Positions 9,379 through 64,000 of a stretch of DNA of 64,000 bases are shown here, piece by piece (positions within the stretch are counted from its first letter, which is position 1; every line of letters begins with the position of its first letter). The stretch covers positions 124,419,593-124,483,592 of the forward strand of contig NC_090378.1 in NCBI RefSeq assembly GCF_036365525.1, written 5' to 3'. Under the pieces are notes generated by a model. That model had not been told where the DNA came from. It saw nothing but the letters and a program-made list of their open reading frames with translations, and did not search any database. A program made the position numbers and the translations under genes. This DNA is from Heterodontus francisci. Taxonomy: Eukaryota.

Positions 9379-9681
9379 ACTGGATTGTGAAGTGTGATGT
9401 TCCTGAGTACACAGACTGGATTGTGAAGTGTGATGTATCTGAGTACACAGACTGGATTGTGAAGTGTTATGTACCTGAGTACACAGACTGGACTGTGAAG
9501 TGTGATGTACCTGAGTACACAGACTGGACTGTGAAGTGTGATGTACCTGAGTACACAGTCTGGACTGTGAAGTGTGATGTACCTGAGTACACAGACTGGA
9601 CTGTGAAGTGTGATGTACCTGAGTACACAGACTGGACTGTGAAGTGTGATGTACCTGAGTACACAGACTCAACTGTGAAGT
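9379..9681. repeat. 36-bp minisatellite, left part (~8 units)
   Basis: Unit GTACCTGAGTACACAGACTGGA(T/C)TGTGAAGTGTGAT. Confidence 0.95.
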
Positions 9682-23183: not shown

Positions 23184-23268
23184 GTTGCTGACGTGCCTTT
23201 CTCTGGGTGATACCATTTACATACTGAGAAACAGGCAGTCAGACTCTCACAGGCTGCAGCTTTATAAA
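23171..23268 (+). promoter_or_regulatory. Ig light-chain V promoter
   Basis: PU.1/ETS-like AGAGGAAGTG (23171-23180), CRE-like TGACGT (23189-23194), octamer variant ATTTACAT (23215-23222; consensus ATTTGCAT) and TATAAA (23263-23268), about 60 bp before the ATG. Confidence 0.75.
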
Positions 23269-23328: not shown

Positions 23329-23377
23329 ATGATTTCACCCATCCAGCTGATCTGGCCTCTGGCATTCTGCGTCGCAG
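23329..23377 (+). CDS. IGKV: Ig kappa-type light-chain leader exon (MISPIQLIWPLAFCVA-G)
   Basis: Kozak caccATG, hydrophobic signal peptide, phase-1 donor G|gtac. Resembles the shark NS4/type III leader as recalled. Confidence 0.93.
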
Positions 23378-23563
23378 GTACAAATCTCTCTCCTTCCACG
23401 GTTAATATTTTCCTGCTGTTTGTTTCAGTCCAATTCTACTGACTTGTGATTGGAAAGAAAATGATGAAACAAGAGGAGCGGTCACTGTCTCTAACAATAT
23501 TTCATTTTACAGGGTCTTTCTGTGACAGTTCTTACTTCACTCTGTTTCTCTATTACCCCTCAG

Positions 23564-23864
23564 GTATCAGTGGAGACACCATCATCATGACCCAGTCTCC
23601 ACCGGCACTGTCAGTGACACTGGGACAGACCGCAACGATCACCTGTACGGCCAGCCAGTCCGTTAGCAATTATGTAGCTTGGTATCAGCAGCGAGACGGT
23701 CAGAAACCCACTCTCCTGATCTATTATGCAACAACTCGATACACAGGAATATCCGAACGATTCACCGGCAGTCAACAGAACCTCAAATTCACTCTGACAA
23801 TCAGTAATGTACAGAATGAGGATGTCGCAGATTATTACTGTCAGCAAGGTTACAGCAGCACCGA
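23564..23864 (+). CDS. IGKV: Unrearranged Ig kappa-type (NS4/type III-like) light-chain V exon
   Basis: Acceptor tattacccctcag. Encodes (G)[53 protein letters not shown]-...[25 protein letters not shown]. Both Cys, the conserved Trp and DYYC are intact, with no stops. Confidence 0.96.
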
Positions 23865-23892
23865 CACAGTGAGACAGAGCCGTACAAAAACC
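23865..23892 (+). other. V(D)J recombination signal sequence with 12-bp spacer
   Basis: CACAGTG-agacagagccgt-ACAAAAACC: consensus heptamer and nonamer. A 12-RSS on V is the kappa-type configuration. Confidence 0.98.
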
Positions 23893-23897
23893 TCAAT

Positions 23898-26800
23898 ACA
23901 CACAGTCCCACCTCCTGTACTGACACATCCCACAGTTATATATAATATATAATAATGGACACACAGTCCCACCTCCAGCACTGACACGGCCCACAGTTAT
24001 ATATAATATATAATAATGGACACACAGTCCCACCTCCTGTACTGACACATCCCACAGTTATATATAATATATAATAATGGACACACAGTCCCACCTCCAG
24101 CACTGACACGGCCCACAGTTATATATAATATATAATAATGGATACACAGTCCCACCTCCTGTACTGACACGGCCCACAGTTATATATAATATATAATAAT
24201 GAACACACAGTCCCACCTCCTGTACTGACGCATCCCACAGTTATATATAATATATAATAATGAACACACAGTCCCACCTCCTGTACTGACGCATCCCACA
24301 GTTATATATAATATATAATAATGAACACACAGTCCCACCTCCTGTACTGACACATCCCACAGTTATATATAATATATAATAATGGACACACAGTCCCACC
24401 TCCAGCACTGACACGGCCCACAGTTATATATAATATATAATAATGAACACACAGTCCCACCTCCTGTACTGACACATCCCACAGTTATATATAATATATA
24501 ATAATGGACACACAGTCCCACCTCCAGCACTGACACGGCCCACAGTTATATATAATATATAATAATGGATACACAGTCCCACCTCCTGTACTGACACATC
24601 CCACAGTTATATATAATATATAATAATGAACACACAGTCCCACCTCCTGTACTGACACATCCCACAGTTATATATAATATATAATAATGGACACACAGTC
24701 CCACCTCCAGCACTGACACGGCCCACAGTTATATATAATATATAATAATGGATACACAGTCCCACCTCCTGTACTGACACGGCCCACAGTTATATATAAT
24801 ATATAATAATGAACACACAGTCCCACCTCCTGTACTGACGCATCCCACAGTTATATATAATATATAATAATGAACACACAGTCCCACCTCCTGTACTGAC
24901 GCATCCCACAGTTATATATAATATATAATAATGGACACACAGTCCCACCTCCTGTACTGACACATTCCACAGTTATATATAATATATAACAATGGACACA
25001 CCGTCCCACCTCCTGAACTGACACGGCCCACAGTTATATATAATATATAGTAATGGACACACAGTCCCACCTCCTGTACTGACACATCCCACAGTTATAT
25101 ATAATATATAATAATGAACACACAGTCCCACCTCCTGTACTGACACATCCCACAGTTATATATAATATATAATAATGAACACACAGTCCCACCTCCTGTA
25201 CTGACACGTCCCACAGTTATATATAATATATAATAATGGACACACAGTCCCACCTCCTGTACTGACACATTCCACAGTTATATATAATATATAACAATGG
25301 ACACACCGTCCCACCTCCTGAACTGACACGGCCCACAGTTATATATAATATATAATAATGGACACACAGTCCCACCTCCTGTACTGACACATCCCACAGT
25401 TATATATAATATATAATAATGAACACACAGTCCCACCTCCTGTACTGACACATCCCACAGTTATATATAATATATAATAATGGACACACAGTCCCACCTC
25501 CAGCACTGACACGGCCCACAGTTATATATAATATATAATAATGGACACACAGTCCCACCTCCAGCACTGACACGGCCCACAGTTATATATAATATATAAT
25601 AATGGATACACAGTCCCACCTCCTGCACTGACACATCCCACAGTTATATATAATATATAATAATGGATACACAGTCCCACCTCCTGTACTGACACATCCC
25701 ACAGTTATATATAATATATAATAATGGACACACAGTCCCACCTCCAGCACTGACACGGCCCACAGTTATATATAATATATAATAAAGGACACACAGTCCC
25801 ACCTCCTGTACTGACACGGCCCACAGTTATATATAATATATAATAATGAACACACAGTCCCACCTCCTGTACTGACGCATCCCACAGTTATATATAATAT
25901 ATAATAATGGACGCACAGTCCCACCTCCTATACTGACGCATCCCACAGTTATATATAATATATAATAATGGACACACAGTCCCACCTCCTGTACTGACAT
26001 GGCCCACAGTTATATATAATATATAATAATGAACACACAGTCCCACCTCCTGTACTGACGCATCCCACAGTTATATATAATATATAATAATGGACACACA
26101 TTCCCACCTCCTGTACTGACACGGCCCACAGTTATATATAATATATAATAATGAACACACAGTCCCAACCCCTGCACTGACACGTCCCACAGTTATATAT
26201 AATATATAATAATGGATACACAGTCCCAAGCCCTGCACTGACATGTCCCACAGTTATATATAATATATCATAATGAACACACAGTCCCACCTCCTGTACT
26301 GACACATCCCACAGTTATATATAATATATAATAATGGACACACAGTCCCACCTCCCGCACTGACACATCCCACAGTTATATATAATATATAATAATGGAC
26401 ACACAGTCCCACCTCCTGTACTGACGCATCCCACAGTTATATATAATATATAATAATGGACACACAGTCCCACCTCCTGTACTGACGCATCCCACAGTAA
26501 TATATAATATATAATAATGGACACACAGTCCCACCTCCTGTACTGACACATCCCACAGTTATATATAATATATAATAATGGACACACAGTCCCACCTCCA
26601 GCACTGACACGGCCCACAGTTATATATAATATATAATAATGGACACACAGTCCCACCTCCTGTACTGACGCATCCCACAGTTATATACAATATATAATAA
26701 TGGACACACAGTCCCACCTCCTGTACTGACGCATCCCACAGTTATATATAATATATAATAATGGACACACAGTCCCACCTCCAGCACTGACACGGCCCAC

Positions 26801-29800
26801 AGTTATATATAATATATAATAATGGACACACAGTCCCACCTCCTGTACTGACACATCCCACAGTTATATATAATATATAATAATGGATACACAGTCCCAC
26901 CTCCTGTACTGACACGGCCCACAGTTATATATAATATATAATAATGGACACACAGTCCCACCTCCAGCACTGACACGGCCCACAGTTATATATAATATAT
27001 AATAATGGATACACAGTCCCACCTCCTGTACTGACACGGCCCACAGTTATATATAATATATAATAATGAACACACAGTCCCACCTCCTGTACTGACGCAT
27101 CCCACAGTTATATATAATATATAATAATGGACGCACAGTCCCACCTCCTATACTGACGCATCCCACAGTTATATATAATATATAATAATGGACACACAGT
27201 CCCACCTCCTGTACTGACACGGCCCACAGTTATATATAATATATAATAATGAACACACAGTCCCACCTCCTGTCCTGACGCATCCCACAGTTATATATAA
27301 TATATAATAATGGACACACATTCCCACCTCCTGTACTGACACGGCCCACAGTTATATATAATATATAATAATGAACACACAGTCCCAACCCCTGCACTGA
27401 CACGTCCCACAGTTATATATAATATATAATAATGGATACACAGTCCCAACCCCTGCACTGACACGTCCCACAGTTATATATAATATATAATAATGAACAC
27501 ACAGTCCCAACCCCTGCACTGACACGTCCCACAGTTATATATAATATATAATAATGGACACACAGTCCCACCTCCTGTACTGACACATCCCACAGTTATA
27601 TATAATATATAATAATGGATACACAGTCCCAAGCCCTGCACTGACACGTCCCACAGTTATATATAATATATCATAATGAACACACATTCCCACCTCCTGT
27701 ACTGACACATCCCACAGTTATATATAATATATAATAATGGACACACAGTCCCACCTCCCGCACTGACACATCCCACAGTTATATATAATATATAATAATG
27801 GAGACACAGTCCCACCTCCTGCACTGACACATCCCACAGTTATATATAATATATAATAATGGATACACAGTCCCACCTCCTGTACTGACACATCCCACAG
27901 TTATATATAATATATAATAATGGATACACAGTCCCACCTCCTGTACTGACACATCCCACAGTTATATATAATATATAATAATGGATACACAGTCCCAACC
28001 CCTGTACTGACACGTCCCACAGTTATATATAATATATAATAATGGACACACAGTCCCACCTCCTGTACTGACACATCCCACAGTTATATATAATATATAA
28101 TAATGGACACACAGTCCCACCTCCTGCACTGACACATCCCACAGTTATATATAATATATAATAATGGATACACAGTCCCACCTCCTGTACTGACACGTCC
28201 CACAGTTATATATAATATATAATTATGGACACACCGTCCCACCTCCTGTACTGCCACATCACACAGTTATATATGATATATAATAATGGACAGACAGTCC
28301 CACCTCCTATACTGACAAATCCCACAGTTATATATAATATATAATAATGGACACATGGTTCCACCTCCTGCACTGACACGTTCCACAGCTTTATATATAA
28401 AATATAATAATGGACACACAGTCCCACCTCCTGTACTGACACATCCCACAGTTATATATAATATATAATAATGGACAACAGTCCCACCTCCCGCACTGAC
28501 ACATCCCACAGTTGTATATAATATATAATAAGGGACACACATTGCCACCTCCTGCACTGACACATCCCACAGTTATATATAATATATAATAATGGACTCA
28601 CAGTCCCACCTCCTCTACTGACACAACCCACAGTTATATATTATATATAATAATGGACACATGGTCCCACCTCCCGCACTGACACATCCCACAGTTATAT
28701 ATAATAGATAATAATGGACACATGGTCCCACCTCCCGCACTGACACATCCCACAGTTATATGTAATATATAATATTGGACACACAGTCCCACCTCCCGCA
28801 CTGACACATCCCACAGTTACATATAATATATAATAATGGACACACAGTCCCACCTCCTCTACTGACACATCCCACAGTTATATACAATATATAATAATGG
28901 ACACACGGTCCCACCACCTGCACTGACACATCCCACAGTTATATATAATATATAATATTGGACACACAGTCCCACCTCCTGTACTGACACATCCCACTGT
29001 TCTCTATAATATATATTAATGGACACACAGTCCCACCTCCTCGACTGACACGTTCCACAGTTATATATAATATATAATAATGGGCACACAGTCCCACCTC
29101 CTGTACTGACACATCACACAGTTATATATAATATATAATAATGGACACACAGTCCCACCTCCTGTACTGACATATCCCACAATTATATATAATATATAAT
29201 AATGGACAAACAGTCCCACCTCCTGTACTGACACATCCCACAGTTATATATAATCTTATCATGGACACACAGTCCCACCTCCTGTACTGACACATCCCAC
29301 AGTTATATATAATATATAATAATGGACACAGAGTCCCACCTCCTGTACTGACACATCTCACAGTCATATGTCATATACAATAATGGACACACAGTCCCAC
29401 CTCCGATACTGACATATTCCACATTTATATATAATATATAATAATGGACACACAGTCCCACCTCCTGTACTGACACGTCCCACAGTTATAAATAATATTA
29501 TAATGGACACACAGTCCCACCGCCTGTACTGACACAACCGACAGTTATATATAATATATAATAATAGACACACAGTCCCACCTCCCGCACTGACACATCC
29601 CACAGTTATATATGATATATAATAATTGACTCACAGTCCCACCTACTGTACTGACACATCCCACAGTTATATATAATATATAATAATGGACACACAGTCC
29701 CACCTCCTGCACTGACACATCCCACAGTTATATATAATATATCATATTGGACACACAGTCCCACCTCCCGCACTGAGACATCCCACAGTTATATATAATC

Positions 29801-32800
29801 TATAATAATGAACACACAGTCCCAGCTCCTGTACTGACACATCCCACAGTTATATGTAATATATAATAATGGACACACAGTCCCACCTCCTGTACTGAAA
29901 CATCCCTCAGTTATATATAATATATAATAATGGACACACAGTCCCACCTCCTATACTGACATATCCCACAGTTATATATAATATATAATAATGGATACAC
30001 AGTCCCACCTCCTGTACTGACACGTCCCACAGTTATATATAATATATAATTATGGACACACAGTCCCACCTCCTGCACTGACACGTCCCACAGTTATATA
30101 TAATATATAATTATGGACACACAGTCCCACCTCCTGCACTGACAGATCCCACAGTTATATATAAGATATAATTATGGACACACAGTCCCACCTCCTATAC
30201 TGAGATATCCCACAGTTATATATAATATATAATAATGGATACACAGTCCCACCTCCTGTACTGACACATCTCACAGTTATATATCATATATAATAATGGA
30301 CACACAGTCCTACCTTCTGTACTGACACATCTCACAGTTATATATCATATACAATAATAGACACACAGTCCCACCTCCTGTACTGACACATCCCACAGTT
30401 ATATATAATATATAATAATGGACACACAGTCCCACCTTCTGTACTGACACATCTCACAGTTATATAACATATACAATAATAGACACACAGTCCCACCTCC
30501 TGTACTGACACATCCCACAGTTATATATAATATATAATAATGGACACACAGTCCCACCTCCTGTACTGACACATCCCACAGTTATATATAATATATAATA
30601 ATGGACACACAGTCCCACCTTCTGTACTGACACATCTCACAGTTATATATAATCTACAATAATGGACACACAGTCCCACCTCCTGTACTGACATATCCCA
30701 CAATTATATATAATATATAATAATAGACACACAGTCCCACCTCCTGTACTGACACATCCCACAGTTATATATAATATATAATAATGGACACACAGTCCCA
30801 CCTCCTGTACTGACACATCCCACAGTTATATATAATATTCTAATGGACACACAGTCCCACCTCCTGTACTGACACGTCCCACAGTTATATATAATATGTA
30901 ATAATAAACACACATTCCCACCTCCTGTACTGACACAACCGACAGTTATATATATTAGATAATAATGGACACACAGTCCCACCTCCTCGACTGACACGTT
31001 CCACAGTTATATTTGATATATAATAATGGACACATGGTTCCACCTCCTGCACTGACACGTTCCACAGCTTTATATATAAAATATAATAATGGACAACAGT
31101 CCCACCTCCTGCACTGACACATCCCACAATTATATAGAATATATAATAATGGACTCACAGTCCCACCTCCTCCACTGACACAACCCACAGTTATATATAA
31201 TATATAATAATGGACACACAGTCCCAGCTCCCGCACTGACACATCCCACAGTTATATATAATATATAATAATGGACACACAGTCCCACGTCCCGCACTGA
31301 CACATCCCACAGTTATATATAATACATAATATTGGACACACAGTCCCACCTCCTGCACTGACACATCCCACAGTTATACATAATATATAATATTGGACAC
31401 ACAGTCCCACCTCCTCTACTGACACAACCCACAGTTATACATAATATATAATATTGGACACACAGTCCCACCTCCTGCACTGACACATCCCACAATTATA
31501 TATTATATATAATAATGGACTCACAGTCCCACCTCCTCTACTGACACAACCCACAGTTATACATAATATATAATTATGGACACACAGTCCCACCTCCTGC
31601 ACTGACACGTCCCACAGTTATATATAATATATAATTATGGACACACAGTCCCACCTCCTGCACTGACATATCCCACAGTTATATATAATATATAATTCTG
31701 GACACACAGTCCCACCTCCTATACTGAGATATCCCACAGTTATATATAATATATAATAATGGATACACAGTCCCACCTCCTGTACTGACACATCTCACAG
31801 TTATATATCATATATAATAATGGACACACAGTCCTACCTTCTGTACTGACACATCTCACAGTTATATATCATATACAATAATAGACACACAGTCCCACCT
31901 CCTGTACTGACACATCCCACAGTTATATATAATATATAATAATGGACACACAGTCCCACCTTCTGTACTGACACATCTCACAGTTATATAACATATACAA
32001 TAATAGACACACAGTCCCACCTCCTGTACTGACACATCCCACAGTTATATGTAATATATAATAATGGACACACAGTCCCACCTCCTGTACTGACACATCC
32101 CACAGTTATATATAATATATAATAATGGACACACAGTCCCACCTTCTGTACTGACACATCTCACAGTTATATATAATCTACAATAATGGGCACACAGTCC
32201 CACCTCCTGTACTGACATATCCCACAATTATATATAATATATAATAATAGACACACAGTCCCACCTCCTGTACTGACACATCCCACAGTTATATATAATA
32301 TTATAATGGACACACAGTCCCACCTCCTGTACTGACACGTCCCACAGTTATATATAATATGTAATAATAAACACACATTCCCACCTCCTGTACAGACACA
32401 ACCGACAGTTATATATATTATATAATAATGGACACACAGTCCCACCTCCTCGACTGACACGTTCCACAGTTATATTTGATATATAATAATGGACACATGG
32501 TTCCACCTCCTGCACTGACACGTTCCACAGCTTTATATATAAAATATAATAATGGACAACAGTTCCACCTCCTGCACTGACACATCCCACAATTATATAT
32601 TATATGTAATAATGGACTCACAGTCCCACCTCCTCTACTGACACAACCCACAGTTATATATAATATATAATAATGGACACACAGTCCCACCTCCCGCACT
32701 GACACATCCCACAGTTATATATAATATATAATAATGGACACACAGTCCCACCTCCCGCACTGACACATCCCACAGTTATATATAATATATAATATTGGAC

Positions 32801-35800
32801 ACACAGTCCCACCTCCTCTACTGACACAACCCACAGTTATACATAATATATAATATTGGACACACAGTCCCACCTCCTGCACTGACACATCCCACAATTA
32901 TATATTATATATAATAATGGACTCACAGTCCCACCTCCTCTACTGACACAACCCACAGTTATACATATTATATAATATTGGACACACAGTCCCACCTCCC
33001 GCACTGACACATCCCACAGTTATACATAATATATAATATTGGATACACAGTCCCACCTCCCGCACTGACACATCCCACAATTATATATTATATATAATAA
33101 TGGACTCACAGTCCCACCTCCTCTACTGACACAACCCACAGTTATATATAATATATAATAATGGACACACAGTCCCACCTCCCGCACTGACACATCCCAC
33201 AATTATATATTATATATAATAATGGACTCACAGTCCCACCTCCTCTACTGACACAACCCACAGTTATATATAATATATAATATTGGACACACAGTCCCAC
33301 CTCCCGCACTGACACATCCCACAGTTATATATAATATATAATATTGGACACACAGTCCCACCTCCTGCACTGACACATCCCACAATTATATATTATATAT
33401 AATAATGGACTCACAGTCCCACCTCCCGCACTGACACATCCCACAGTTATATATAATAGATAATAATGGACACACAGTCCCACCTCCTGCTCTGACACAT
33501 CCCACATTTATATATAATATATAATAATGGACACACAGTCCCACCTCCCGCACTGACACATCCCACTGTTATATCTAATAATAATAATGGACACACAGTC
33601 CCACTCCTGTACTGACACATCCCACAGTTGTATATAATATATTATAATCGACACACAGTCCCACCTCCCGCACTGACACATCCCACAGTTATATATAATA
33701 TATAATAATGGACACACAGTCCCACCTCCTGTCCTGACACTTCCCTCAGTTATATATAATATATAATAATGGACACACAGTCCCACCTCCTGCACTGACA
33801 CATCCCACAGTTATATATAATATATAATAATGGACACACAGTCCCACCCCCTGTACTGACACATCCCACTGTCATCTAGAATATATAATAATGGGCTCAC
33901 AGTCCCACGTCCTGTACTGACACATCCCACAGTTATATATAATATATAATAATGGACACACAGTCCCACCTCCTGCACTGACACATCCCACATTTATATA
34001 TAATATATAATAATGGACACACAGTCCCACCTCCTGTACTGACACATTCAACAGTTATATATAATATATAATAATGGACACACAGTCCCACCTCCTGTAC
34101 TGACACATCCCACAGTTATATCTAATATATAATAATGGACACACAGTCCCACCTCCTGGACTGACACGTCCCACAGTTATATATAAGACATAATATTGGA
34201 CACACAGTCCCACCTCCTGTACTGACACATCCGACAGTTATATATAATATATAATATTGGACACACAGCCCCACCTCCTGTCCTGACAGATCCCACTGTT
34301 ACCTAGAATATATAATAATGGGCTCACAGTCCCAAGTCCTGTACTGACACATCCCACAGTTATATATAATATATGTTCATGGACACACAGTCCCACCTCC
34401 CGCACTGACACATCCCACAGTTATGTATAAGACATAATATTGGACACACAGTCCCACCTCCTGTACTGACACATCCGACAGTTATCTAGAATATATAATA
34501 ATGGACACACAGTCCCACCTCCCACACTGACACATCCGACAGTTATATATAATAGATAATAATGGACACACAGTCCCACCTCCTGCACTGACACATCCCA
34601 CATTTATATATGATATATAATAATGGACACACAGTCCCACCTCCCGCACTGACGCATCCCACAGTTATATATAATATATAATATTGGACGCACAGTCCCA
34701 CCTCCTCGACTGACACGTTCGACAGTTATATATAATATATAATAATGGACACACAGTCCCACCTCCTGTACTGACACATCCCACAGTTATATATAATATA
34801 TAATAATGGACACACGGTCCCACCTCCCGCACTGACACATCCCACAATTATATATAATATATAATAATGGACACACAGTCCCACCTCCTCGACTGACACT
34901 TTCCACAGTTATATATAATATATAATAATGGACGCATAGTCCCACCTCCCACACTGACACGTTCCACAGTTATATATAATATATAATAATGGACACACAG
35001 TCCCACCTCCCGCACTGACACATCCCACAGTTATATATAATATATAATATTGGACACACAGTCCCACCTCCTGCACTGACACATCCCACAATTATATATT
35101 ATATATAATAATGGACTCACAGTCCCACCTCCTCTACTGACACAACCCACAGTTATACATAATATATAATATTGGACACACAGTCCCACCTCCTGCACTG
35201 ACACATCCCACAGTTATACATAATATATAATATTGGATACACAGTCCCACCTCCCGCACTGACACATCCCACAATTATATATTATATATAATAATGGACT
35301 CACAGTCCCACCTCCTCTACTGACACAACCCACAGTTATATATAATATATAATAATGGACACACAGTCCCACCTCCCGCACTGACACATCCCACAATTAT
35401 ATATTATATATAATAATGGACTCACAGTCCCACCTCCTCTACTGACACAACCCACAGTTATATATAATATATAATATTGGACACACAGTCCTACCTCCCG
35501 CACTGACACATCCCACAGTTATATATAATATATAATATTGGACACACAGTCCCACCTCCTGCACTGACACATCCCACAATTATATATTATATATAATAAT
35601 GGACTCACAGTCCCACCTCCTCTACTGACACAACCCACAGTTATATATAATATATAATAATGGACACACAGTCCCACCTCCCGCACTGACACATCCCACA
35701 GTTATATATAATATATAATAATGGACACACAGTCCCACCTCCCGCACTGACACATCCCACAGTTATATATAATAGATAATAATGGACACACAGTCCCACC

Positions 35801-50800: not shown

Positions 50801-53800
50801 CACCTCCTGCACTGACACATCCCACAGTTATATATAATATATAATAATGGACACACAGTCCCACCTCCTGTACTGACACATCCCACATTTATATATGATA
50901 TATAATAATGGACACACAGTCCCACCTCCTGTACTGACACATCCGACAGTTATCTAGAATATATAATAATGGACACACAGTCCCACCTCCCGCACTGACA
51001 CATCCGACAGTTATATATAATATATAATAATGGACACACAGTCCCACCTCCTGCACTGACACATCCCACAGTTATATATAATATATAATAATGGACACAC
51101 AGTCCCACCTCCTGTACTGACACATCCCACATTTATATATGATATATAATAATGGACACACAGTCCCACCTCCCGCACTGACACATCCCACAGTTATATA
51201 TAATATATAATATTGGACGCACAGTCCCACCTCCTCGACTGACATGTTCGACAGTTATATATAATATATAATAATGGACACACAGTCCCACCTCCTGGAC
51301 TGACACATCCCACAGTTATATATAATATATAATAATGGACACACAGTCCCACCTCCCGCACTGACACATCCCACAGTTATATATAATATATAATAATGGA
51401 CACACAGTCCCACCTCCTCGACTGACACTTTCCACAGTTATATATAATATATAATAATGGACGCATAGTCCCACCTCCCACACTGACACGTTCCACAGTT
51501 ATATATAACATATAATAATGGACACACAGTCCCACCTCCCGCACTGACACATCCCACAGTTATATATAATATATAATATTGGACACACAGTCCCACCTCC
51601 TGCACTGACACATCCCACAATTATATATTATATATAATAATGGACTCACAGTCCCACCTCCTCGACTGACACAACCCACAGTTATACATAATATATAATA
51701 TTGGACACACAGTCCCACCTCCTGCACTGACACATCCCACAGTTATACATAATATATAATATTGGATACACAGTCCCACCTCCCGCACTGACACATCCCA
51801 CAATTATATATTATATATAATAATGGACTCACAGTCCCACCTCCTCTACTGACACAACCCACAGTTATATATAATATATAATAATGGACACACAGTCCCA
51901 CCTCCCGCACTGACACATCCCACAATTATATATTATATATAATAATGGACTCACAGTCCCACCTCCTCTACTGACACAACCCACAGTTATATATAATATA
52001 TAATATTGGACACACAGTCCTACCTCCCGCACTGACACATCCCACAGTTATATATAATATATAATATTGGACACACAGTCCCACCTCCTGCACTGACACA
52101 TCCCACAATTATATATTATATATAATAATGGACTCACAGTCCCACCTCCTCTACTGACACAACCCACAGTTATATATAATATAAAATAATGGATACACAG
52201 TCCCACCTCCCGCACTGACACATCCCACAGTTATATATAATAGATAATAATGGACACACAGTCCCACCTCCTGCACTGACACATCCCACATTTATATATT
52301 ATATATAATAATGGACACAAAATCCCACCTCCCGCTCTGACACATCCCACAGTTATATATAATATATAATAATCGACATACAGTCCCACCTACTGCACTG
52401 ACATATCCCACAGTTATATATAATAATAATAATGGACACACAGTCGCACCTCCTGTACTGACACATCCCACAGTTGTATATAATATATTATAATCGACAC
52501 ACAGTCCCACCTCCTGTCCTGACACATCCCTCAGTTATATATAATATATAATAATGGACACACAGTCCCACCTCCTGCACTGACACATCCCACAGTTATA
52601 TATAATATATAATAATGGACACACAGTCCCACCCCCTGTACTGACACATCCCACTGTTATCTAGAATATATAATAATGGGCTCACAGTCCCACGTCCTGT
52701 ACTGACACATCCCACAGTTATATATAATATATGTTCATGGACACACAGTCCCACCTCCCGCACTGACACATCCCACAGTTATATATAATATATAATAATG
52801 GGCACACAGTCCCACCTCCTGTACTGACACATCCCACAGTTAAATTTAATATATAATAATGGACACACAGTCCCACCTCCTGTACTGACACATCCCACAG
52901 TTATATCTAATATATAATAATGGACACACAGTCCCACCTCCTGGACTGACACGTCCCACAGTTATATATAAGACATAATATTGGACACACAGTCCCACCT
53001 CCTGTACTGACACATCCCACAGTTATATATAATATATAATAATGGACACACAGTCCCACCTCCCGCACTGACACATCCCACAGTTATATATAATATATAA
53101 TAATGGACACACAGTCCCACCTCCTCGACTGACACTTTCCACAGTTATATATAATATATAATAATGGACGCATAGTCCCACCTCCCACACTGACACGTTC
53201 CACAGTTATATATAAGACATAATATTGGACACACAGTCCCACCTCCTGTACTGACACATCCCACAGTTATATATAATATATAATAATGGACACACAGTCC
53301 CACCTCCCGCACTGACACATCCCACAGTTATATATAATATATAATAATGGACACACAGTCCCACCTCCTCGACTGACACTTTCCACAGTTATATATAATA
53401 TATAATAATGGACGCATAGTCCCACCTCCCACACTGACTCGTTCCACAGTTATATATAATATATAATAATGGACACACAGTCCCACCTCCCGCACTGACA
53501 CATCCCACAGTTATATATAATATATAATATTGGACACACAGTCCCACCTCCTGCACTGACACATCCCACAATTATATATTATATATAATAATGGACTCAC
53601 AGTCCCACCTCCTCTACTGACACAACCCACAGTTATATATAATATATAATAATGGACACACAGTCCCACCTCCCGCACTGACACATCCCACAGTTATATA
53701 TAATATATAATAATTGACACACAGTCCCACCTCCCGCACTGACACATCCCACAGTTATATATAATAGATAATAATGGACACACAGTCCCACCTCCTGCAC

Positions 53801-56800
53801 TGACACATCCCACATTTATATATTATATATAATAATGGACACAAAATCCCACCTCCCGCACTGACACATCCCACAGTTATATATAATATATAATAATCGA
53901 CAGACAGTCCCACCTCCTGTCCTGACACATCCCTCAGTTATATATAATATATAATAATGGACACACAGTCCCACCTCCTGCACTGACACATCCCACAGTT
54001 ATATATAATATATAATAATGGACACACAGTCCCACCCCCTGTACTGACACATCCCACTGTTATCTAGAATATATAATAATGGGCTCACAGTCCCACGTCC
54101 TGTACTGACACATCCCACAGTTATATATAATATATGTTCATGGACACACAGTCCCACCTCCCGCACTGACACATCCCACAGTTATATATAATATATAATA
54201 ATGGACACACAGTCCCACCTCCTGCACTGACACATCCCACATTTATATATAATATATAATAATGGACACACAGTCCCACCTCCTGTACTGACACATCCCA
54301 CAGTTATATTTAATATATAATAATGGACACACAGTCCCACCTCCTGTACTGACACATCCCACAGTTATATCTAATATATAATAATGGACACACAGTCCCA
54401 CCTCCTGGACTGACACGTCCCACAGTTATATATAAGACATAATATTGGACACACAGTCCCACCTCCTGTACTGACACATCCGACAGTTATATATAATATA
54501 TAATATTGGACAGACAGCCCCACCTCCTGTCCTGACAGATCCCACTGTTATCTAGAATATATAATAATGGGCTCACAGTCCCACGTCCTGTACTGACACA
54601 TCCCACAGTTATATATAATATATGTTCATGGACACACAGTCCCACCTCCCGCACTGACACATCCCACAGTTATATATAAGACATAATATTGGACACACGG
54701 TCCCACCTCCTGTACTGACACATCCGACAGTTATCTAGAATATATAATCATGGACACACAGTCCCACCTCCCGCACTGACACATCCGACAGTTATATATA
54801 ATATATAATAATGGACACACAGTCCCACCTCCTGCACTGACACATCCCACATTTATATATGATATATAATAATGGACACACAGTCCCACCTCCCGAACTG
54901 ACACATCCCACAGTTATATATAATATATAATAATGGACGCACAGTCCCACCTCCTCGACTGACACGTTCCACAGTTATATATAATATATAATAATGGACA
55001 CACAGTCCCACCTCCTGTACTGACACATCCCACAGTTATATATAATATATAATAATGGACACACAGTCCCACCTCCCGCACTGACACATCCCACAGTTAT
55101 ATATAATATATAATAATGGACACACAGTCCCACCTCCTCGACTGACACTTTCCACAGTTATATATAATATATAATAAGGGACGCACAGTCCCACCTCCTC
55201 GACTGACACGTTCCACAGTTATATATAATATATAATAATGGACGCACAGTCCCACCTCCTCGACTGACACATTCCACAGTTATATATAATATATAATAAT
55301 GGACGCATAGTCCCACCTCCCACACTGACACGTTCCACAGTTATATATAATATATAATAATGGACACACAGTCCCACCTCCCGCACTGACACATCCCACA
55401 GTTATATATAATATATAATATTGGACACACAGTCCCACCTCCTGCACTGACACATCCCACAATTATATATTATATATAATAATGGACTCACAGTCCCACC
55501 TCCTCTACTGACACAACCCACAGTTATACATAATATATAATATTGGACACACAGTCCCACCTCCTGCACTGACACATCCCACAATTATATATTATATATA
55601 ATAATGGACTCACAGTCCCACCTCCTGCACTGACACATCCCACAGTTATACATAATATATAATATTGGATACACAGTCCCACCTCCCGCACTGACACATC
55701 CCACAATTATATATTATATATAATAATGGACTCACAGTCCCACCTCCTCTACTGACACAACCCACAGTTATATATAATATATAATAATGGACACACAGTC
55801 CCACCTCCCGCACTGACACATCCCACAATTATATATTATATATAATAATGGACTCACAGTCCCACCTCCTCTACTGACACAACCCACAGTTATATATAAT
55901 ATATAATAATGGATACACAGTCCCACCTCCCGCACTGACACATCCCACAGTTATATATAATAGATAATAATGGACACACAGTCCCACCTCCTGCACTGAA
56001 AAATCCCACATTTATATATTATATATAATAATGGACACAAAATCCCACCTCCCGCTCTGACACATCCCACAGTTATATATAATATATAATAATCGACATA
56101 CAGTCCCACCTCCTGCACTGACATATCCCACAGTTATATATAATAATAATAATGGACACACAGTCGCACCTCCTGTACTGACACATCCCACAGTTGTATA
56201 TAATATATTATAATCGACACACAGTCCCACCTCCCGCACTGACCCATCCCACAGTTATATATAATATATAATAATGGACACACAGTCCCACCTCCTGTCC
56301 TGACACATCCCTCAGTTATATATAATATATAATAATGGACACACAGTCCCACCTCCTGCACTGACACATCCCACAGTTATATATAATATATAATAATGGA
56401 CACACAGTCCCACCCCCTGTACTGACACATCCCACTGTTATCTAGAATATATAATAATGGGCTCACAGTCCCACGTCCTGTACTGACACATCCCACAGTT
56501 ATATATAATATATGTTCATGGACACACAGTCCCACCTCCCGCACTGACACATCCCACAGTTATATATAATATATAATAATGGACACACAGTCCCACCTCC
56601 TGCACTGACACATCCCACATTTATATATAATATATAATAATGGACACACAGTCCCACCTCCTGTACTGACACATCCCACAGTTATATTTAATATATAATA
56701 ATGGACACACAGTCCCACCTCCTGTACTGACACATTCCACAGTTATATCTAATATATAATAATGGACACACAGTCCCACCTCCTGGACTGACACGTCCCA

Positions 56801-59800
56801 CAGTTATATATAAGACATAATATTGGACACACAGTCCCACCTCCTGTACTGACACATCCCACAGTTATATATAATATATAATAATGGACACACAGTCCCA
56901 CCTCCCGCACTGACACATCCCACAGTTATATATAATATATAATAATGGACACACAGTCCCACCTCCTCGACTGACACTTTCCACAGTTATATATAATATA
57001 TAATAATGGACGCATAGTCCCACCTCCCACACTGACACGTTCCACAGTTATATATAATATATAATAATGGACACACAGTCCCACCTCCCGCAATGACACA
57101 TCCCACAGTTATATATAATATATAATATTGGACACACAGTCCCACCTCCTGCACTGACACATCCCACAATTATATATTATATATAATAATGGACTCACAG
57201 TCCCACCTCCTCTACTGACACAACCCACAGTTATATATAATATATAATAATGGACACACAGTCCCACCTCCCGCACTGACACATCCCACAGTTATATATA
57301 ATATATAATAATGGACACACAGTCCCACCTCCCGCACTGACACATCCCACAGTTATATATAATAGATAATAATGGACACACAGTCCCACCTCCTGCACTG
57401 ACACATCCCACATTTATATATTATATATAATAATGGACACAAAATCCCACCTCCCGCTCTGACACATCCCACAGTTATATATAATATATAATAATGGACG
57501 CATAGTCCCACCTCCCACACTGACACGTTCCACAGTTATATATAATATATAATAATGGACACACAGTCCCACCTCCCGCACTGACACATCCCACAGTTAT
57601 ATATAATATATAATATTGGACACACAGTCCCACCTCCTGCACTGACACATCCCACAATTATATATTATATATAATAATGGACTCACAGTCCCACCTCCTC
57701 TACTGACACAACCCACAGTTATATATAATATATAATAATGGACACACAGTCCCACCTCCCGCACTGACACATCCCACAGTTATATATAATATATAATAAT
57801 GGACACACAGTCCCACCTCCCGCACTGACACATCCCACAGTTATATATAATAGATAATAATGGACACACAGTCCCACCTCCTGCACTGACACATCCCACA
57901 TTTATATATTATATATAATAATGGACACAAAATCCCACCTCCCGCTCTGACACATCCCTCAGTTATATATAATATATAATAATGGACACACAGTCCCACC
58001 TCCTGCACTGACACATCCCACAGTTATATATAAAATATAATAATGGACACACAGTCCCACCCCCTGTACTGACACATCCCACTGTTATCTAGAATATATA
58101 ATAATGGGCTCACAGTCCCACGTCCTGTAATGACACATCCCACAGTTATATATAATATATGTTCATGGACACACAGTCCCACCTCCCGCACTGACACATC
58201 CCACAGTTATATATAATATATAATAATGGACACACAGTCCCACCTCCTGTACTGACACATCCCACATTTATATATAATATATAATAATGGACACACAGTC
58301 CCACCTCCTGCACTGACACATCCCACAGTTATATATAATATATAATAATGGACACACAGTCCCACCTCCTGCACTGACACATCCCACATTTATATATAAT
58401 ATATAATAATGGACACACAGTCCCACCTCCTGCACTGACACATCCCACAGTTATATATAATATATAATAATGGACACACAGTCCCACCTCCTGCACTGAC
58501 ACATCCCACATTTATATATAATATATAATAATGGACACACAGTCCCACCTCCTGTACTGACACATCCCACAGTTATATTTAATATATAATAATGGACACA
58601 CAGTCCCACCTCCTGTACTGACACATCCCACAGTTATATCTAATATATAATAATGGACACACAGTCCCACCTCCTGGACTGACACGTCCCACAGTTATAT
58701 ATAATATATAATATTGGACAGACAGCCCCACCTCCTGTCCTGACAGATCCCACTGTTATCTAGAATATATAATAATGGGCTCACAGTCCCATGTCCTGTA
58801 CTGACACATCCCACAGTTATATATAATATATGTTCATGGACACACAGTCCCACCTCCCGCACTGACACATCCCACAGTTATATATAAGACATAATATTGG
58901 ACACACAGTCCCACCTCCTGTACTGACACATCCGACAGTTATCTAGAATATATAATAATGGACACACAGTCCCACCTCCCGCACTGACACATCCGACAGT
59001 TATATATAATATATAATAATGGACACACAGTCCCACCTCCTGCACTGACACATCCCACATTTATATATGATATATAATAATGGAAACACAGTCCCACCTC
59101 CCGAACTGACACATCCCACAGTTATATATAATATATAATAATGGACGCACAGTCCCACCTCCTCGACTGACACGTTCCACAGTTATATATAATATATAAT
59201 AATGGACACACAGTCCCACCTCCTGTACTGACACATCCCACAGTTATATATAATATATAATAATGGACACACAGTCCCACCTCCCGCACTGACACATCCC
59301 ACAGTTATATATAATATATAATAATGGACACACAGTCCCACCTCCTGCACTGACACATCCCACAGTTATATATAATATATATTAATGGACGCACCGTGCC
59401 ACCTCCTCGACTGACACGTTCCACAGTTATATATAATATATAATAATGGACAGACAGTCCCACCTCCCGCACTGACACATCCCACAGTTATATATAATAT
59501 ATAATAATGGACACACAGTCCCACCTCCTGTACTGACACATCCTACAGTTATATATAATATATAATAATGGACACACAGTCCCACCTCCCGCACTGACAC
59601 ATCCCACAATTATATATAGTATATAATAATGGACACACAGTCCCACCTCCCGAACTGACACATCCCACAGTTATATATAATATATAATAATGGACGCACA
59701 GTCCCACCTCCTCGACTGACACATCCCACAGTTATATATAATATATAATAATGGACGCACAGTCCCACCTCCTCGACTGACACGTTCCACAGTTATATAT

Positions 59801-62800
59801 AATATATAATAATGGACACACAGTCCCACCTCCTGCACTGACACATCCCACAGTTATATATAATATATAATAATGGACACACAGTCCCACCTCCTGTACT
59901 GACACATCCCACAGTTATATATAATATATAATAATGGACACACAGTCCCACCTCCCGCACTGACACATCCCACAGTTATATATAATATATAATAATGGAC
60001 ACACAGTCCCACCTCCTCGACTGACACTTTCCACAGTTATATATAATATATAATAAGGGACGCACAGTCCCACCTCCTCGACTGACACGTTCCACAGTTA
60101 TATATAATATATAATAATGGAGACACAGTCCCACTTCCTTGATTTACACGTTCCACAGTTATATATAATATATAGTAATGGACACACAGTCCCACCTCCC
60201 GCACTGACACATCCCACAATTATATATAGTATATAATAATGGACACACAGTCCCACCTCCCGAACTGACACATCCCACAGTTATATATAATATATAATAA
60301 TGGACGCACAGTCCCACCTCCTCGACTGACACGTTCCACAGTTATATATAATATATGATAATGGACACACAGTCCCACCTCCTGTACTGACACATCCCAC
60401 AGTTATATATAATATATAATAATGGACACACAGTCCCACCTCCCGCACTGACACATCCCACAGTTATATATAATATATAATAATGGACACACAGTCCCAC
60501 CTCCTCGACTGACACTTTCCACAGTTATATATAATATATAATAAGGGACGCACAGTCCCACCTCCTCGACTGACACGTTCCACAGTTATATATAATATAT
60601 AATAATGGAGACACAGTCCCACTTCCTTGATTTACACGTTCCACAGTTATATATAATATATAGTAATGGACACACAGTCCCACCTCCCGCACTGACACAT
60701 CCCACAGTTATATATAATATATAATAATGGACGCACAGTCCCACCTCCTCGACTGACACGTTCCACAGTTATATATAATATATAATAATGGACACACAGT
60801 CCCACCTCCTGCACTGACACATCCCACAGTTATATATAATATATAATAATGGACACACAGTCCCACCTCCTGCACTGACACATCCCACAGTTATATATAA
60901 TATATAATAATGGACACACAGTCCCACCTCCTCGACTGACACTTTCCACAGTTATATATAATATATAATAAGGGACGCACAGTCCCACCTCCTCGACTGA
61001 CACGTTCCACAGTTATATATAATATATAATAATGGAGACACAGTCCCACTTCCTTGATTTACACGTTCCACAGTTATATATAATATATAGTAATGGACAC
61101 ACAGTCCCACCTCCCGCACTGACACATCCCACAATTATATATTATATATAATAATGGACTCACAGTCCCACCTCCTCTACTGACACAACCCACAGTTATA
61201 TATAATATATAATAATGGACACACAGTCCCACCTCCCGCACTGACACATCCCACAGTTATATATAATATATAATAATGGACACACAGTCCCACCTCCCGC
61301 ACTGACACATCCCACAGTTATATATAATAGATAATAATGGACACACAGTCCCACCTCCTGCACTGACACATCCCACATTTATATATTATATATAATAATG
61401 GACACAAAATCCCACCTCCCGCTCTGACACATCCCTCAGTTATATATAATATATAATAATGGACACACAGTCCCACCTCCTGCACTGACACATCCCACAG
61501 TTATATATAAAATATAATAATGGACACACAGTCCCACCCCCTGTACTGACACATCCCACTGTTATCTAGAATATATAATAATGGGCTCACAGTCCCACGT
61601 CCTGTAATGACACATCCCACAGTTATATATAATATATGTTCATGGACACACAGTCCCACCTCCCGCACTGACACATCCCACAGTTATATATAATATATAA
61701 TAATGGACACACAGTCCCACCTCCTGTACTGACACATCCCACATTTATATATAATATATAATAATGGACACACAGTCCCACCTCCTGCACTGACACATCC
61801 CACAGTTATATATAATATATAATAATGGACACACAGTCCCACCTCCTGCACTGACACATCCCACATTTATATATAATATATAATAATGGATACACAGTCC
61901 CACCTCCTGCACTGACACATCCCACAGTTATATATAATATATAATAATGGACACACAGTCCCACCTCCTGCACTGACACATCCCACATTTATATATAATA
62001 TATAATAATGGACACACAGTCCCACCTCCTGTACTGACACATCCCACAGTTATATTTAATATATAATAATGGACACACAGTCCCACCTCCTGTACTGACA
62101 CATCCCACAGTTATATCTAATATATAATAATGGACACACAGTCCCACCTCCTGGACTGACACGTCCCACAGTTATATATAATATATAATATTGGACAGAC
62201 AGCCCCACCTCCTGTCCTGACAGATCCCACTGTTATCTAGAATATATAATAATGGGCTCACAGTCCCATGTCCTGTACTGACACATCCCACAGTTATATA
62301 TAATATATGTTCATGGACACACAGTCCCACCTCCCGCACTGACACATCCCACAGTTATATATAAGACATAATATTGGACACACAGTCCCACCTCCTGTAC
62401 TGACACATCCGACAGTTATCTAGAATATATAATAATGGACACACAGTCCCACCTCCCGCACTGACACATCCGACAGTTATATATAATATATAATAATGGA
62501 CACACAGTCCCACCTCCTGCACTGACACATCCCACATTTATATATGATATATAATAATGGAAACACAGTCCCACCTCCCGAACTGACACATCCCACAGTT
62601 ATATATAATATATAATAATGGACGCACAGTCCCACCTCCTCGACTGACACGTTCCACAGTTATATATAATATATAATAATGGACACACAGTCCCACCTCC
62701 TGTACTGACACATCCCACAGTTATAAATAATATATAATAATGGACACACAGTCCCACCTCCCGCACTGACACATCCCACAGTTATATATAATATATAATA

Positions 62801-64000
62801 ATGGACACACAGTCCCACCTCCTGCACTGACACATCCCACAGTTATATATAATATATATTAATGGACGCACCGTGCCACCTCCTCGACTGACACGTTCCA
62901 CAGTTATATATAATATATAATAATGGACAGACAGTCCCACCTCCCGCACTGACACATCCCACAGTTATATATAATATATAATAATGGACACACAGTCCCA
63001 CCTCCTGTACTGACACATCCTACAGTTATATATAATATATAATAATGGACACACAGTCCCACCTCCCGCACTGACACATCCCACAATTATATATAGTATA
63101 TAATAATGGACACACAGTCCCACCTCCCGAACTGACACATCCCACAGTTATATATAATATATAATAATGGACGCACAGTCCCACCTCCTCGACTGACACA
63201 TCCCACAGTTATATATAATATATAATAATGGACGCACAGTCCCACCTCCTCGACTGACACGTTCCACAGTTATATATAATATATAATAATGGACACACAG
63301 TCCCACCTCCTGTACTGACACATCCCACAGTTATATATAATATATAATAATGGACACACAGTCCCACCTCCCGCACTGACACATCCCACAGTTATATATA
63401 ATATATAATAATGGACACACAGTCCCACCTCCTCGACTGACACTTTCCACAGTTATATATAATATATAATAAGGGACGCACAGTCCCACCTCCTCGACTG
63501 ACACGTTCCACAGTTATATATAATATATAATAATGGAGACACAGTCCCACTTCCTTGATTTACACGTTCCACAGTTATATATAATATATAGTAATGGACA
63601 CACAGTCCCACCTCCCGCACTGACACATCCCACAATTATATATAGTATATAATAATGGACACACAGTCCCACCTCCCGAACTGACACATCCCACAGTTAT
63701 ATATAATATATAATAATGGACACACAGTCCCACCTCCCGCACTGACACATCCCACAGTTATATATAATATATAATAATGGACACACAGTCCCACCTCCTC
63801 GACTGACACTTTCCACAGTTATATATAATATATAATAATGGACGCACAGTCCCACCTCCTCGACTGACACGTTCCACAGTTATATATAATATATAATAAT
63901 GGAGACACAGTCCCACTTCCTTGATTTACACGTTCCACAGTTATATATAATATATAGTAATGGACACACAGTCCCACCTCCCGCACTGACACATCCCACA
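23898..64000. repeat. 61-bp tandem satellite, >=40 kb (~657 units), runs off the window end
   Basis: Consensus GGACACACAGTCCCACCTCCTGTACTGACACATCCCACAGTTATATATAATATATAATAAT. Single orientation, no insertions seen, multi-kb higher-order duplications. Confidence 0.99.

What the first reader, a model, noticed from the sequence alone, without database searches (positions are those of the whole stretch)
23865..64000. Intact V-12RSS abutted by a 40-kb satellite of co-oriented RSS-heptamer-like motifs
Seen: the array starts about 5 bp after the nonamer. Each 61-bp unit has CACAGTC and CACAGTT (6/7 heptamer matches, essential CAC intact) spaced 30/31 bp apart. That gives on the order of 1,000+ copies, all pointing the same way as the V RSS. 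The opposite polarity (GTG on +) occurs in only a handful of variant units. Established: shark light chains are V-J-C clusters with short V-J intervals, and in mammals RAG bound at one RSS cleaves convergent cryptic CAC sites. Inference: if J lies downstream, its 23-RSS faces a large field of V-polarity decoy heptamers. The array could act as a RAG sink or rheostat for cluster usage, or yield abortive satellite-J joins. This would be a repeat-based control layer on V(D)J recombination.
Basis: partly seen in the sequence, partly recalled or inferred. Interest (0 to 1): 0.9.

Follow-up and report, generated by a model that had tools for sequence, protein, structure and literature searches.

The report
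Shark kappa V gene abutting giant satellite
An intact shark antibody light-chain V gene is followed, 5 bases after its recombination signal, by at least 40 kb of a 61-base satellite where a 0.5-kb spacer to J is expected; the junction is real and conserved between species, but nothing shows that the repeat controls recombination.

Summary
An intact kappa-type V segment (ATG at 23329, 186-nt leader intron, V exon 23564-23864) carries a perfect 12-RSS (23865-23892). Five bases later a 61-bp satellite starts (23898) and runs 657 units to the window end. It holds 1,056 exact CACAGTC/CACAGTT motifs on the + strand and only 5 GTG.

The junction is not an assembly error. A contig from an RNA-like run spans it. 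A related species' contig stops at the same base. Three Chiloscyllium punctatum V gene models read through the RSS into the same unit sequence at the same offset.

The V family is spliced, joined to a J (…TFGKGTKL) and very highly expressed. No J lies in the window. Nurse shark kappa genes have a V-J spacer of only about 500 bp.

This scan noted the same V-satellite(-J-C) layout at 8 or more other kappa clusters on this chromosome piece. I did not check those notes.

The RAG sink idea stays untested:
- Heptamer positions are not significantly better conserved than the rest of the unit.
- The unit's best RSS-like layout is a 23-type signal, the wrong partner for a J 23-RSS.
- Motif number and orientation follow from tandem repetition.

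The most likely reading is a lineage-specific satellite expansion of the V-J intervening DNA, excised when V joins J.

The parts
23215..23222 (+). Octamer-like promoter motif ATTTACAT (7 of 8 to ATTTGCAT), about 105 bp upstream of the ATG; a TATAAA-like box follows near 23262
   Evidence: A 7/8 match alone is not above chance window-wide; its position is what fits a V promoter.
23329..23377 (+). Leader exon (MISPIQLIWPLAFCVA plus the first base of a split Gly codon)
   Evidence: RNA-run contigs splice from here (table 5).
23378..23563 (+). Leader intron, 186 nt, GT..AG; the same length as in nurse shark NS4 genes
   Evidence: One search shows a 186-nt skip in 17 contigs each of X1 and X2 and none in the DNA runs. 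PMC2193156 reports 186 bp.
23564..23864 (+). V exon of a kappa-type (type III/NS4) light-chain V segment, open, with Cys23, WYQQ and DVADYYC
   Evidence: Pfam V-set E=2e-18. Best relatives are Chiloscyllium punctatum kappa-like V at 80%. Translation. A DNA-run contig covers 23524-23825 with 0 differences.
23865..23892 (+). Canonical 12-RSS: CACAGTG, 12-bp spacer, ACAAAAACC (7/7 and 9/9)
23893..23897 (+). 5-bp linker TCAAT between the nonamer and the first satellite unit
   Evidence: The same offset appears in C. punctatum read-through models (YKNL-N-THS...).
23898..64000 (+). 61-bp satellite, 657 units, running off the window end; C-rich strand is + (G 10.6%, GC skew about -0.46); mean 3.6 mismatches per unit to the consensus; no global higher-order period
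45736..53847 (+). Internal block duplication: 45736-49090 and 50493-53847 are 99.97% identical over 3,355 bp (55 units, lag 78 units)
57631..63364 (+). Second block duplication: 57631-59887 and 61108-63364, 99.8% identical over 2,257 bp (37 units, lag 57)
36672..36678 (+). Variant unit with a perfect CACAGTG heptamer (its twin is at 44541-44547, the same duplicated block); a poor nonamer at 12 bp, ACACAGTCC at 23 bp

Best explanation
This is the 5' half of a shark kappa-type (NS4/type III) light-chain minicluster. It holds a functional-looking V segment with a canonical 12-RSS. The V-J intervening DNA, about 0.5 kb in nurse shark, is here a tandem array of at least 40.1 kb built from a 61-bp unit. 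The unit, or a single-copy forerunner, already sat 5 bp after the nonamer in the common ancestor with Chiloscyllium. The array grew by ordinary satellite dynamics: unequal exchange and multi-kb block duplication. It was probably copied along with the cluster as kappa clusters multiplied (inferred). It would leave the chromosome on the excision circle when V joins a J that most likely lies beyond the window end (inferred). The more than 1,000 CACAGT motifs and their single orientation follow automatically from repeating one unit that contains two of them. Low-level RAG nicking at these sites is plausible, but there is no sign that the array was selected for it. V-J joining and expression of this V family proceed at high level despite such arrays.
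For: The anatomy of the V, RSS and array comes. The junction is real. X1 contig record 8 (103 nt, 3 differences) spans 23824-23926. A contig of related organism B covers 23820-23898 and stops at the array start, and organism B also holds satellite-like contigs 89-93% alike. C. punctatum V gene models P0003, P0008 and P0004 read through the RSS into [22 protein letters not shown]. The window gives [26 protein letters not shown], that is the RSS plus the first unit at the same offset. Satellite dynamics are visible: 143 or more distinct 61-mers, flat identity against distance, and 3.4-kb and 2.3-kb internal duplicates at 99.8-99.97% identity. Depth in the DNA run is about 1e6 over the unit against 70-110 for single-copy flanks. 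That suggests roughly 1e4 units genome-wide, about 15-20 arrays of this size (a rough figure, since the tool warns that depth is not copy number). Other windows' notes report the same 61-bp array between kappa V and J-C at 8 or more loci (unchecked AI notes). There is no selection signal on the heptamers. The V family is spliced, V-J joined (loose ends at 23847-23863 read ...TFGKGTKL) and at about 1e6 depth in RNA-like runs. The nurse shark reference gives a 186-bp leader intron and a 502-524 bp V-J interval (PMC2193156).
Against: No J or C is seen, because the array runs off the window, so an orphan V is not excluded. Tandem repetition in Chiloscyllium is not shown; only the first unit is visible through protein models. 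The unit's RSS-likeness (12 of 16 to an ideal 23-RSS in about 390 units) is rarer than expected by chance (0.3-0.9%). It sits exactly at the cut-off that Zhang et al. 2024 used to flag strong unannotated RSSs (PMC11153149). Conserved placement next to an RSS in two or more species, and possibly in every kappa cluster, could also reflect function. RNA-like runs hold satellite sequence at 1e4-1e5 depth, which is unexplained. Expression could be assigned only to the V family (85% or more alike), not to this copy.
Confidence: 0.7

Rival explanations
1. RAG decoy or rheostat. Hundreds of weak RSS-like sites between V and J capture or are nicked by RAG. This lowers or tunes productive V-J joining per cluster, for example to limit how many of the many kappa clusters rearrange in one B cell, or it yields abortive joins.
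For: There are 3,227 co-oriented CAC on the + strand, convergent with a downstream J RSS. About 390 units match CAC plus 9 of 13 ideal bases as a 23-type signal, which is rarer than chance for one unit (0.3-0.9%). RAG uses convergent sites as simple as CAC (PMC11153149). Mouse gamma-satellite holds 23-cRS that recombine on plasmids and are cut in vivo (PMC2193808). A V-RSS-satellite read-through contig in an RNA-like run suggests open chromatin. The repeat is associated with Ig across species.
Against: The heptamer positions are not significantly better conserved (p=0.10), and the G of CACAGTT is among the most variable positions of the unit at 87%. The nonamer ACACAGTCC lacks the A-tract at positions 6-7, and the 12-bp option has a 3/9 nonamer. 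The best layout is 23-type, incompatible with a J 23-RSS under 12/23 restriction. In the C. punctatum first unit the second heptamer reads as His-Phe or His-Ile, so CACAGT is not kept there (inferred from protein). The family is abundantly and productively joined. Number and orientation are one event, not 1,000.
Confidence: 0.08
2. Orphan V. This cluster has lost its J-C, or never had one downstream. The satellite simply ends the cluster, and the V is a relic that cannot rearrange in cis.
For: There is no J-like sequence (FGxGT, or TTCGG...GGxACC) on either strand of the window, including 40.1 kb downstream of V. Expression could not be assigned to this copy.
Against: The V, its splice sites, promoter motifs and a perfect 7/7 + 9/9 RSS are all intact. 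Other windows' notes describe J and J-C units 15-51 kb beyond the V behind the same satellite, and a J-C with 47 kb of satellite upstream (unchecked). RNA contigs match this V's own 3' end up to 23859 and then continue into J.
Confidence: 0.12
3. Assembly artefact. The array length or the V-array link is produced by misassembly or collapse and expansion of a satellite.
For: Two internal blocks are 99.8-99.97% identical over 2.3-3.4 kb, a pattern that assemblers can create. The array reaches the window end. Short-read contigs cannot span it.
Against: The junction is seen in an independent library, in a second species and in C. punctatum gene models. There are no gaps or N. The many unit variants form an ordered block structure typical of real arrays. 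DNA depth supports about 1e4 units in the genome.
Confidence: 0.04
4. Architectural or regulatory spacer. The array acts on chromatin, for example as an AT-rich matrix-attachment-like half-unit, a site of germline transcription or heterochromatin nucleation, and sets cluster accessibility or V-J synapsis independently of RAG recognition of the motifs.
For: Each unit has a 25-bp pure A/T half with a near-palindrome. Satellite sequence is present in RNA-like runs at levels that differ 8-fold between two runs with equal V expression. The position is conserved.
Against: The array is not a CTCF-site array: only 19 variant units come within 2 mismatches of the CTCF consensus. There is no Rfam match. 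No data on chromatin exist, and RNA depth could be DNA carry-over.
Confidence: 0.06

Closest known systems
Nurse shark NS4 (kappa, type III) split light-chain genes (Lee et al. 2000, PMC2193156)
   Same: Kappa-like V with a leader, a 186-bp leader intron, an octamer-type promoter, a V 12-RSS with classical heptamer and nonamer, and a J of the FGxGTKL type joined in transcripts.
   Different: There the V-J intervening sequence is 502-524 bp and a whole V-J unit fits in 2.5-2.8 kb. Here at least 40.1 kb of satellite follows the RSS and no J is reached.
Mouse gamma (major) satellite cryptic RSSs (Cowell et al. 2003, PMC2193808)
   Same: A tandem satellite whose unit contains CAC-headed 23-type cryptic signals. 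That work showed such satellite signals can recombine on plasmids and be cut by RAG in vivo, and raised the idea of a harmless sink.
   Different: Gamma-satellite is pericentromeric and unrelated to antigen-receptor loci, and some of its units score near physiological RSSs. The shark unit lies inside a V-J interval, has a weak nonamer, and has not been assayed.
Cryptic CAC targets used during RAG chromatin scanning in mouse Igh/Igk (Zhang et al. 2024, PMC11153149)
   Same: Orientation logic: sites convergent with the recombination-centre RSS give deletional joins. The Cer-J-kappa interval shows such low-level joins.
   Different: Those are scattered single sites used at very low level and detected only by HTGTS. 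No repeat array is involved, and primary V-kappa-to-J-kappa joining there is diffusional, not by scanning.
Chiloscyllium punctatum kappa-like V genes (proteins P0003, P0004, P0008)
   Same: 74-80% identical V. The read-through tails encode the RSS and then the same sequence as the first satellite unit, at the same offset from the nonamer.
   Different: Only about 45 bp beyond the nonamer is visible, through protein models on contigs of 0.6-6.7 kb. Whether it is tandemly repeated there is unknown, and the second heptamer-like motif is not kept.

Membership tests
Ig kappa-type V gene segment (elasmobranch NS4/type III) | V-set Ig domain with conserved Cys23, Trp41 and Cys104 and kappa-like framework motifs | tested here: met
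   Pfam PF07686 E=2.2e-18. ITC...WYQQ...DVADYYC. The nearest proteins are shark kappa-like V genes, followed by vertebrate kappa V genes.
Ig kappa-type V gene segment (elasmobranch NS4/type III) | Leader exon plus a short intron with a split codon, actually spliced | tested here: met
   A 186-nt GT..AG intron. The 186-nt skip appears in 17 contigs in each of two RNA-like runs and in none of the DNA runs. This is family-level evidence (85% or more alike).
Ig kappa-type V gene segment (elasmobranch NS4/type III) | 12-RSS directly 3' of the coding end | tested here: met
   CACAGTG, 12 bp, ACAAAAACC; 7/7 and 9/9.
Ig kappa-type V gene segment (elasmobranch NS4/type III) | Somatic V-J joining and expression of this copy | tested here: inconclusive
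   Contigs matching up to 23847-23863 continue into J (...TFGKGTKL) at very high depth, but paralogues share this 3' end, so the copy cannot be assigned.
Elasmobranch IgL minicluster (V-J-C cassette within a few kb) | A J with a 23-RSS a few hundred bp downstream of V, and C a few kb further | tested here: not met
   No J-like sequence in the 40.1 kb downstream. Nurse shark has about 500 bp. J may lie beyond the window (notes; unchecked).
Satellite DNA | Long head-to-tail array of one unit with variant structure and block duplications | tested here: met
   Period 61, 657 copies, 0% indels. Variants and blocks.
Satellite DNA | Many copies at several genomic sites | tested here: inconclusive
   The DNA-run depth ratio of about 1e4 to 1 suggests 15-20 times the content of this window. 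Other loci are known only from unchecked notes.
Functional (cryptic) recombination signal | CAC at heptamer positions 1-3 | tested here: met
   CAC is present at unit positions 4-6 and 34-36 in 93-99.8% of units.
Functional (cryptic) recombination signal | A-rich nonamer at 12 +/-1 or 23 +/-1 bp | tested here: inconclusive
   The best is ACACAGTCC at 23 bp (6/9, with the A-tract broken at positions 6-7) in about 390 units. With an 11-13 bp spacer, only 25 units have both a 6/7 heptamer and a 6/9 nonamer. RIC models were not available.
Functional (cryptic) recombination signal | Spacer class complementary to the proposed partner (J 23-RSS needs a 12-type signal) | tested here: not met
   The RSS-like layout of the unit is 23-type. 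That the J carries a 23-RSS is inferred from the V 12-RSS and the kappa rule.
Functional (cryptic) recombination signal | Binding, nicking or joining by RAG1/2 | not testable with these tools
   Needs HTGTS or LM-PCR on lymphoid DNA, or in vitro cleavage.
CTCF-site array next to a V RSS | A CTCF core consensus in each unit | tested here: not met
   Only 19 variant units of the array's 657 units come within 2 mismatches of CCASYAGRKGGCRSY; the consensus unit does not.

The most novel reading that the evidence does not exclude
The 61-bp array is a selected part of kappa miniclusters in this shark lineage. It forms a field of hundreds of weak, co-oriented RSS-like sites (23-type, mimicking J for the V 12-RSS, plus bare CACs convergent with the J RSS), tens of kb long. 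This field lowers the per-cluster chance of productive V-J joining or absorbs RAG cuts. It would thereby help restrict how many of the dozens of clusters rearrange in one B cell, a repeat-based solution to light-chain cluster exclusion.
Probability: 0.07. Interest if true: 0.85.

Novelty: new variant of a known kind. Interest (0 to 1): 0.45.

Why it matters
Shark Ig genes are the textbook case of compact V-(D)-J-C miniclusters that rearrange over a few hundred bases. A kappa cluster whose V and J are separated by tens of kb of one satellite, yet whose family is abundantly joined and expressed, would show that the minicluster mode tolerates long-range V-J synapsis. The repeat is anchored 5 bp from the RSS in at least two species. 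It would also give a natural system, with arrays of different length in paralogous clusters, for testing three things: how distance and dense cryptic CAC sites affect RAG choice, how clusters are excluded, and how satellites drive gain and loss of clusters. If the array is neutral, it remains a useful warning. These arrays break short-read assemblies of shark Ig loci and can make intact clusters look like orphan V or orphan J-C units.

Tried and rejected
I therefore could not read the Chiloscyllium or Scyliorhinus contigs around the V homologues, and used the read-through tails of their protein models instead.
- J in the window: none on either strand.
- Progenitor of the unit elsewhere in the window: only chance-level blastn hits of 21 nt or less.
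- Global higher-order repeat: none. Identity is flat at about 0.90 for lags 1-40, with only local block duplications.
- CTCF-site array: rejected.
- Known RNA families in 1-26000: none.
- Satellite unit in public metagenome contigs: no match.
- The search of earlier findings by sequence: blank.
- Literature: I found no paper describing satellites in shark IgL V-J intervals. This is absence within the held library only.
- RIC scoring of the cryptic signals was not done, because the models are not available here.
The exons were translated and searched separately by reference, and the joined step was left out.
- Complex prediction, structure tools and phage, plasmid or E. coli searches were not relevant.

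Full report
**1. What is in the sequence**

The window holds a complete light-chain V gene segment on the + strand.
- An ATG at 23329 opens a 16-codon leader, MISPIQLIWPLAFCVA.
- A GT..AG intron of exactly 186 nt follows (23378-23563).
- The V exon (23564-23864) is open and has the landmarks ITC...WYQQ...DVADYYC.
- It matches Pfam V-set at E=2e-18.
- Its nearest proteins are kappa-like V genes of Chiloscyllium punctatum (up to 80%) and Scyliorhinus torazame (75%), then kappa V genes of bony vertebrates.
- An octamer-like ATTTACAT (23215) and a TATAAA-like box lie upstream.

Directly after the coding end comes a perfect 12-RSS: CACAGTG at 23865-23871, a 12-bp spacer, and ACAAAAACC at 23884-23892.

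After a 5-bp linker the 61-bp satellite starts at 23898 and runs to the window end. TRF gives 657.6 copies, 90% matches and no indels. I found no interruption, no N and no J-like sequence anywhere in the window.

**2.

All are right.
- The unit has CACAGTC at positions 4-10 and CACAGTT at 34-40, so the spacing is 30/31 bp.
- Exact copies number 580 + 476.
- There are 3,227 CAC on the + strand against 5 GTG.
- No ACTGTG occurs in the array.

These numbers are one observation repeated 657 times, and the common orientation is inherent to a tandem array.

**3. Is the junction real?**

Yes.
- In an RNA-like run from the individual that also gave the DNA runs, a 103-nt contig (3 differences) spans the V end, the RSS and the first unit (23824-23926).
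- In a DNA run of a related species (organism B), a V-RSS contig covers 23820-23898 and stops at the first base of the array.
- Separate organism B contigs are 89-93% like the unit.

Three C. punctatum gene models happen to read through the RSS. Their tails, for example [26 protein letters not shown], match the translation of window 23865 onward, [26 protein letters not shown]. That stretch is heptamer, nonamer, linker and first unit, all at the same offset. The unit, or its single-copy forerunner, has therefore sat 5 bp from the kappa V nonamer since before these species split.

**4. How unusual is the layout?**

Nurse shark NS4 (kappa) split genes have the same 186-bp leader intron. Their V-J intervening sequence is only 502-524 bp (PMC2193156). 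Here at least 40.1 kb follows the RSS without a J.

Notes from other windows of this scan report the same 61-bp array starting 5-6 bp after kappa V nonamers at 8 or more loci on this chromosome piece.
- J or J-C units are reported 15-51 kb downstream.
- One J-C unit is reported with 47 kb of satellite upstream.

These are unchecked AI notes, but they changed my first reading (orphan V) to a systematic V-satellite-J-C layout.

A rough independent check fits them. In the DNA run the unit has about 1e6 summed depth against 70-110 for single-copy flanks. That is on the order of 1e4 units, or 15-20 arrays of this size. The tool warns that depth is not copy number.

**5. Expression**

Two RNA-like runs show three things:
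- the 186-nt intron spliced out, in 17 contigs each and in none of the DNA runs;
- V-exon depth near 5e6;
- contigs that follow this V's 3' end to 23847-23863 and then continue into a J reading ...TFGKGTKL.

The family is thus joined and highly expressed. Paralogues share the 3' end, so this copy cannot be singled out.

The V-RSS-satellite contig is about 40 times over-represented, relative to the satellite, compared with DNA. It therefore looks like a germline read-through transcript. Whether the array itself is transcribed is open.

**6. Array dynamics**

- There are 143 or more distinct 61-mers, with a mean of 3.6 mismatches to the consensus.
- Identity is flat at about 0.90 at all distances.
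- Two internal duplicates exist: 3,355 bp at 99.97% identity and 2,257 bp at 99.8%.

This is ordinary satellite behaviour. The near-identical blocks should be checked with long reads.

**7. Tests bearing on the RAG sink idea**

(a) Conservation. Heptamer positions are 96.7% conserved against 93.2% for the rest (p=0.10). The G of CACAGTT is among the most variable positions of the unit, at 87%.

(b) RSS-likeness. The best layout is CACAGTT, 23 bp, ACACAGTCC (6/7 + 6/9) in about 390 units, all on the + strand. Only 25 units have both a 6/7 heptamer and a 6/9 nonamer with an 11-13 bp spacer. By the crude filter of Zhang et al. 2024 (CAC plus at least 9 of 13 ideal bases; PMC11153149), the 23-type sites sit exactly at the cut-off. 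Such a score occurs in 0.3% of random genomic 61-mers and in 0.9% of shuffles. That is mildly unusual, though the A-tract of the nonamer is broken.

(c) Partner class. A 23-type signal in V orientation is the wrong class for a J 23-RSS. If it acts at all, it mimics J for the V 12-RSS, giving inversional or hybrid outcomes.

(d) Other species. In the C. punctatum first unit the second motif is not kept as CACAGT (inferred from protein). Organism B's units do keep CACAGTT.

(e) Other repeats. Other minisatellites in the window also carry CACAG-type motifs. The 36-bp repeat has CACAGTC on the minus strand.

(f) Other roles. The array is not a CTCF-site array.

There is a precedent for satellites with working cryptic signals. 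Mouse gamma-satellite 23-cRS recombine on plasmids and are cut in vivo (PMC2193808).

**8. Verdict**

The functional claim is untested, and the indirect evidence leans against a selected decoy role.

The best explanation (about 0.7) is a lineage-specific satellite expansion of the kappa V-J intervening DNA. It is inherited with the clusters and excised on V-J joining.

The layout itself is a new variant of the shark minicluster, and I did not find it described in the held literature. It has tens of kb between V and J, with the repeat anchored at the RSS in at least two species. It is worth a proper genome-wide and wet-lab follow-up.

Noticed in passing
window 9379-9681 and 11061-13746: Two arrays of a 36-bp minisatellite (8 and 75 copies, 94-96% alike). 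Because 36 is a multiple of 3 they give open frames of 900 aa on both strands, which are repeat artefacts and not genes. Some units carry CACAGTC on the minus strand, the same 6/7 heptamer match as the V-adjacent satellite but in the opposite orientation.
   Followed up: partly
window 14796-15308, 15439-16501, 21324-22040: Three further minisatellites (23-bp x22, 32-bp x33, 43-bp x17) lie within 9 kb upstream of the V gene. The whole inter-cluster region is unusually rich in tandem repeats.
   Followed up: no
window 5193-7223 (-) and 9724-10791 (+): Decayed non-LTR retrotransposon pieces: a reverse-transcriptase fragment (Pfam RVT_1, below the curated cut-off), an endonuclease-like N-terminus (MGDFNCPNINW...), and a 355-aa ORF with a zf-RVT domain (E=1e-11).
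   Followed up: partly
window 22640-23160: About 500 bp of GA-rich low-complexity DNA (GAGAGA/GGGAGA runs) ends some 50 bp before the octamer-like motif of the V promoter.
   Followed up: no
window 23898-23990 as laid in runs X1 and X2: Satellite sequence is present in two RNA-like runs at depths that differ 8-fold (1.2e5 against 1.4e4), although V-exon and intron depths are equal. This could be transcription of the array or variable DNA carry-over.
   Followed up: partly
window 23937-23953 and every unit (positions 40-56): The A/T half of each unit contains a near-perfect palindrome (8-bp arms TTATATAT/ATATATAA around one base). It is a weak cruciform-prone element repeated 657 times.
   Followed up: no
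protein P0005 (Scyliorhinus torazame): This gene model joins a kappa V exon directly to a C-domain sequence (QPTLTLLPPSLEEV...) on a 21-kb contig, skipping J. In the catshark, V and C therefore lie within 21 kb, a hint that giant V-J arrays may not be universal among sharks.
   Followed up: no
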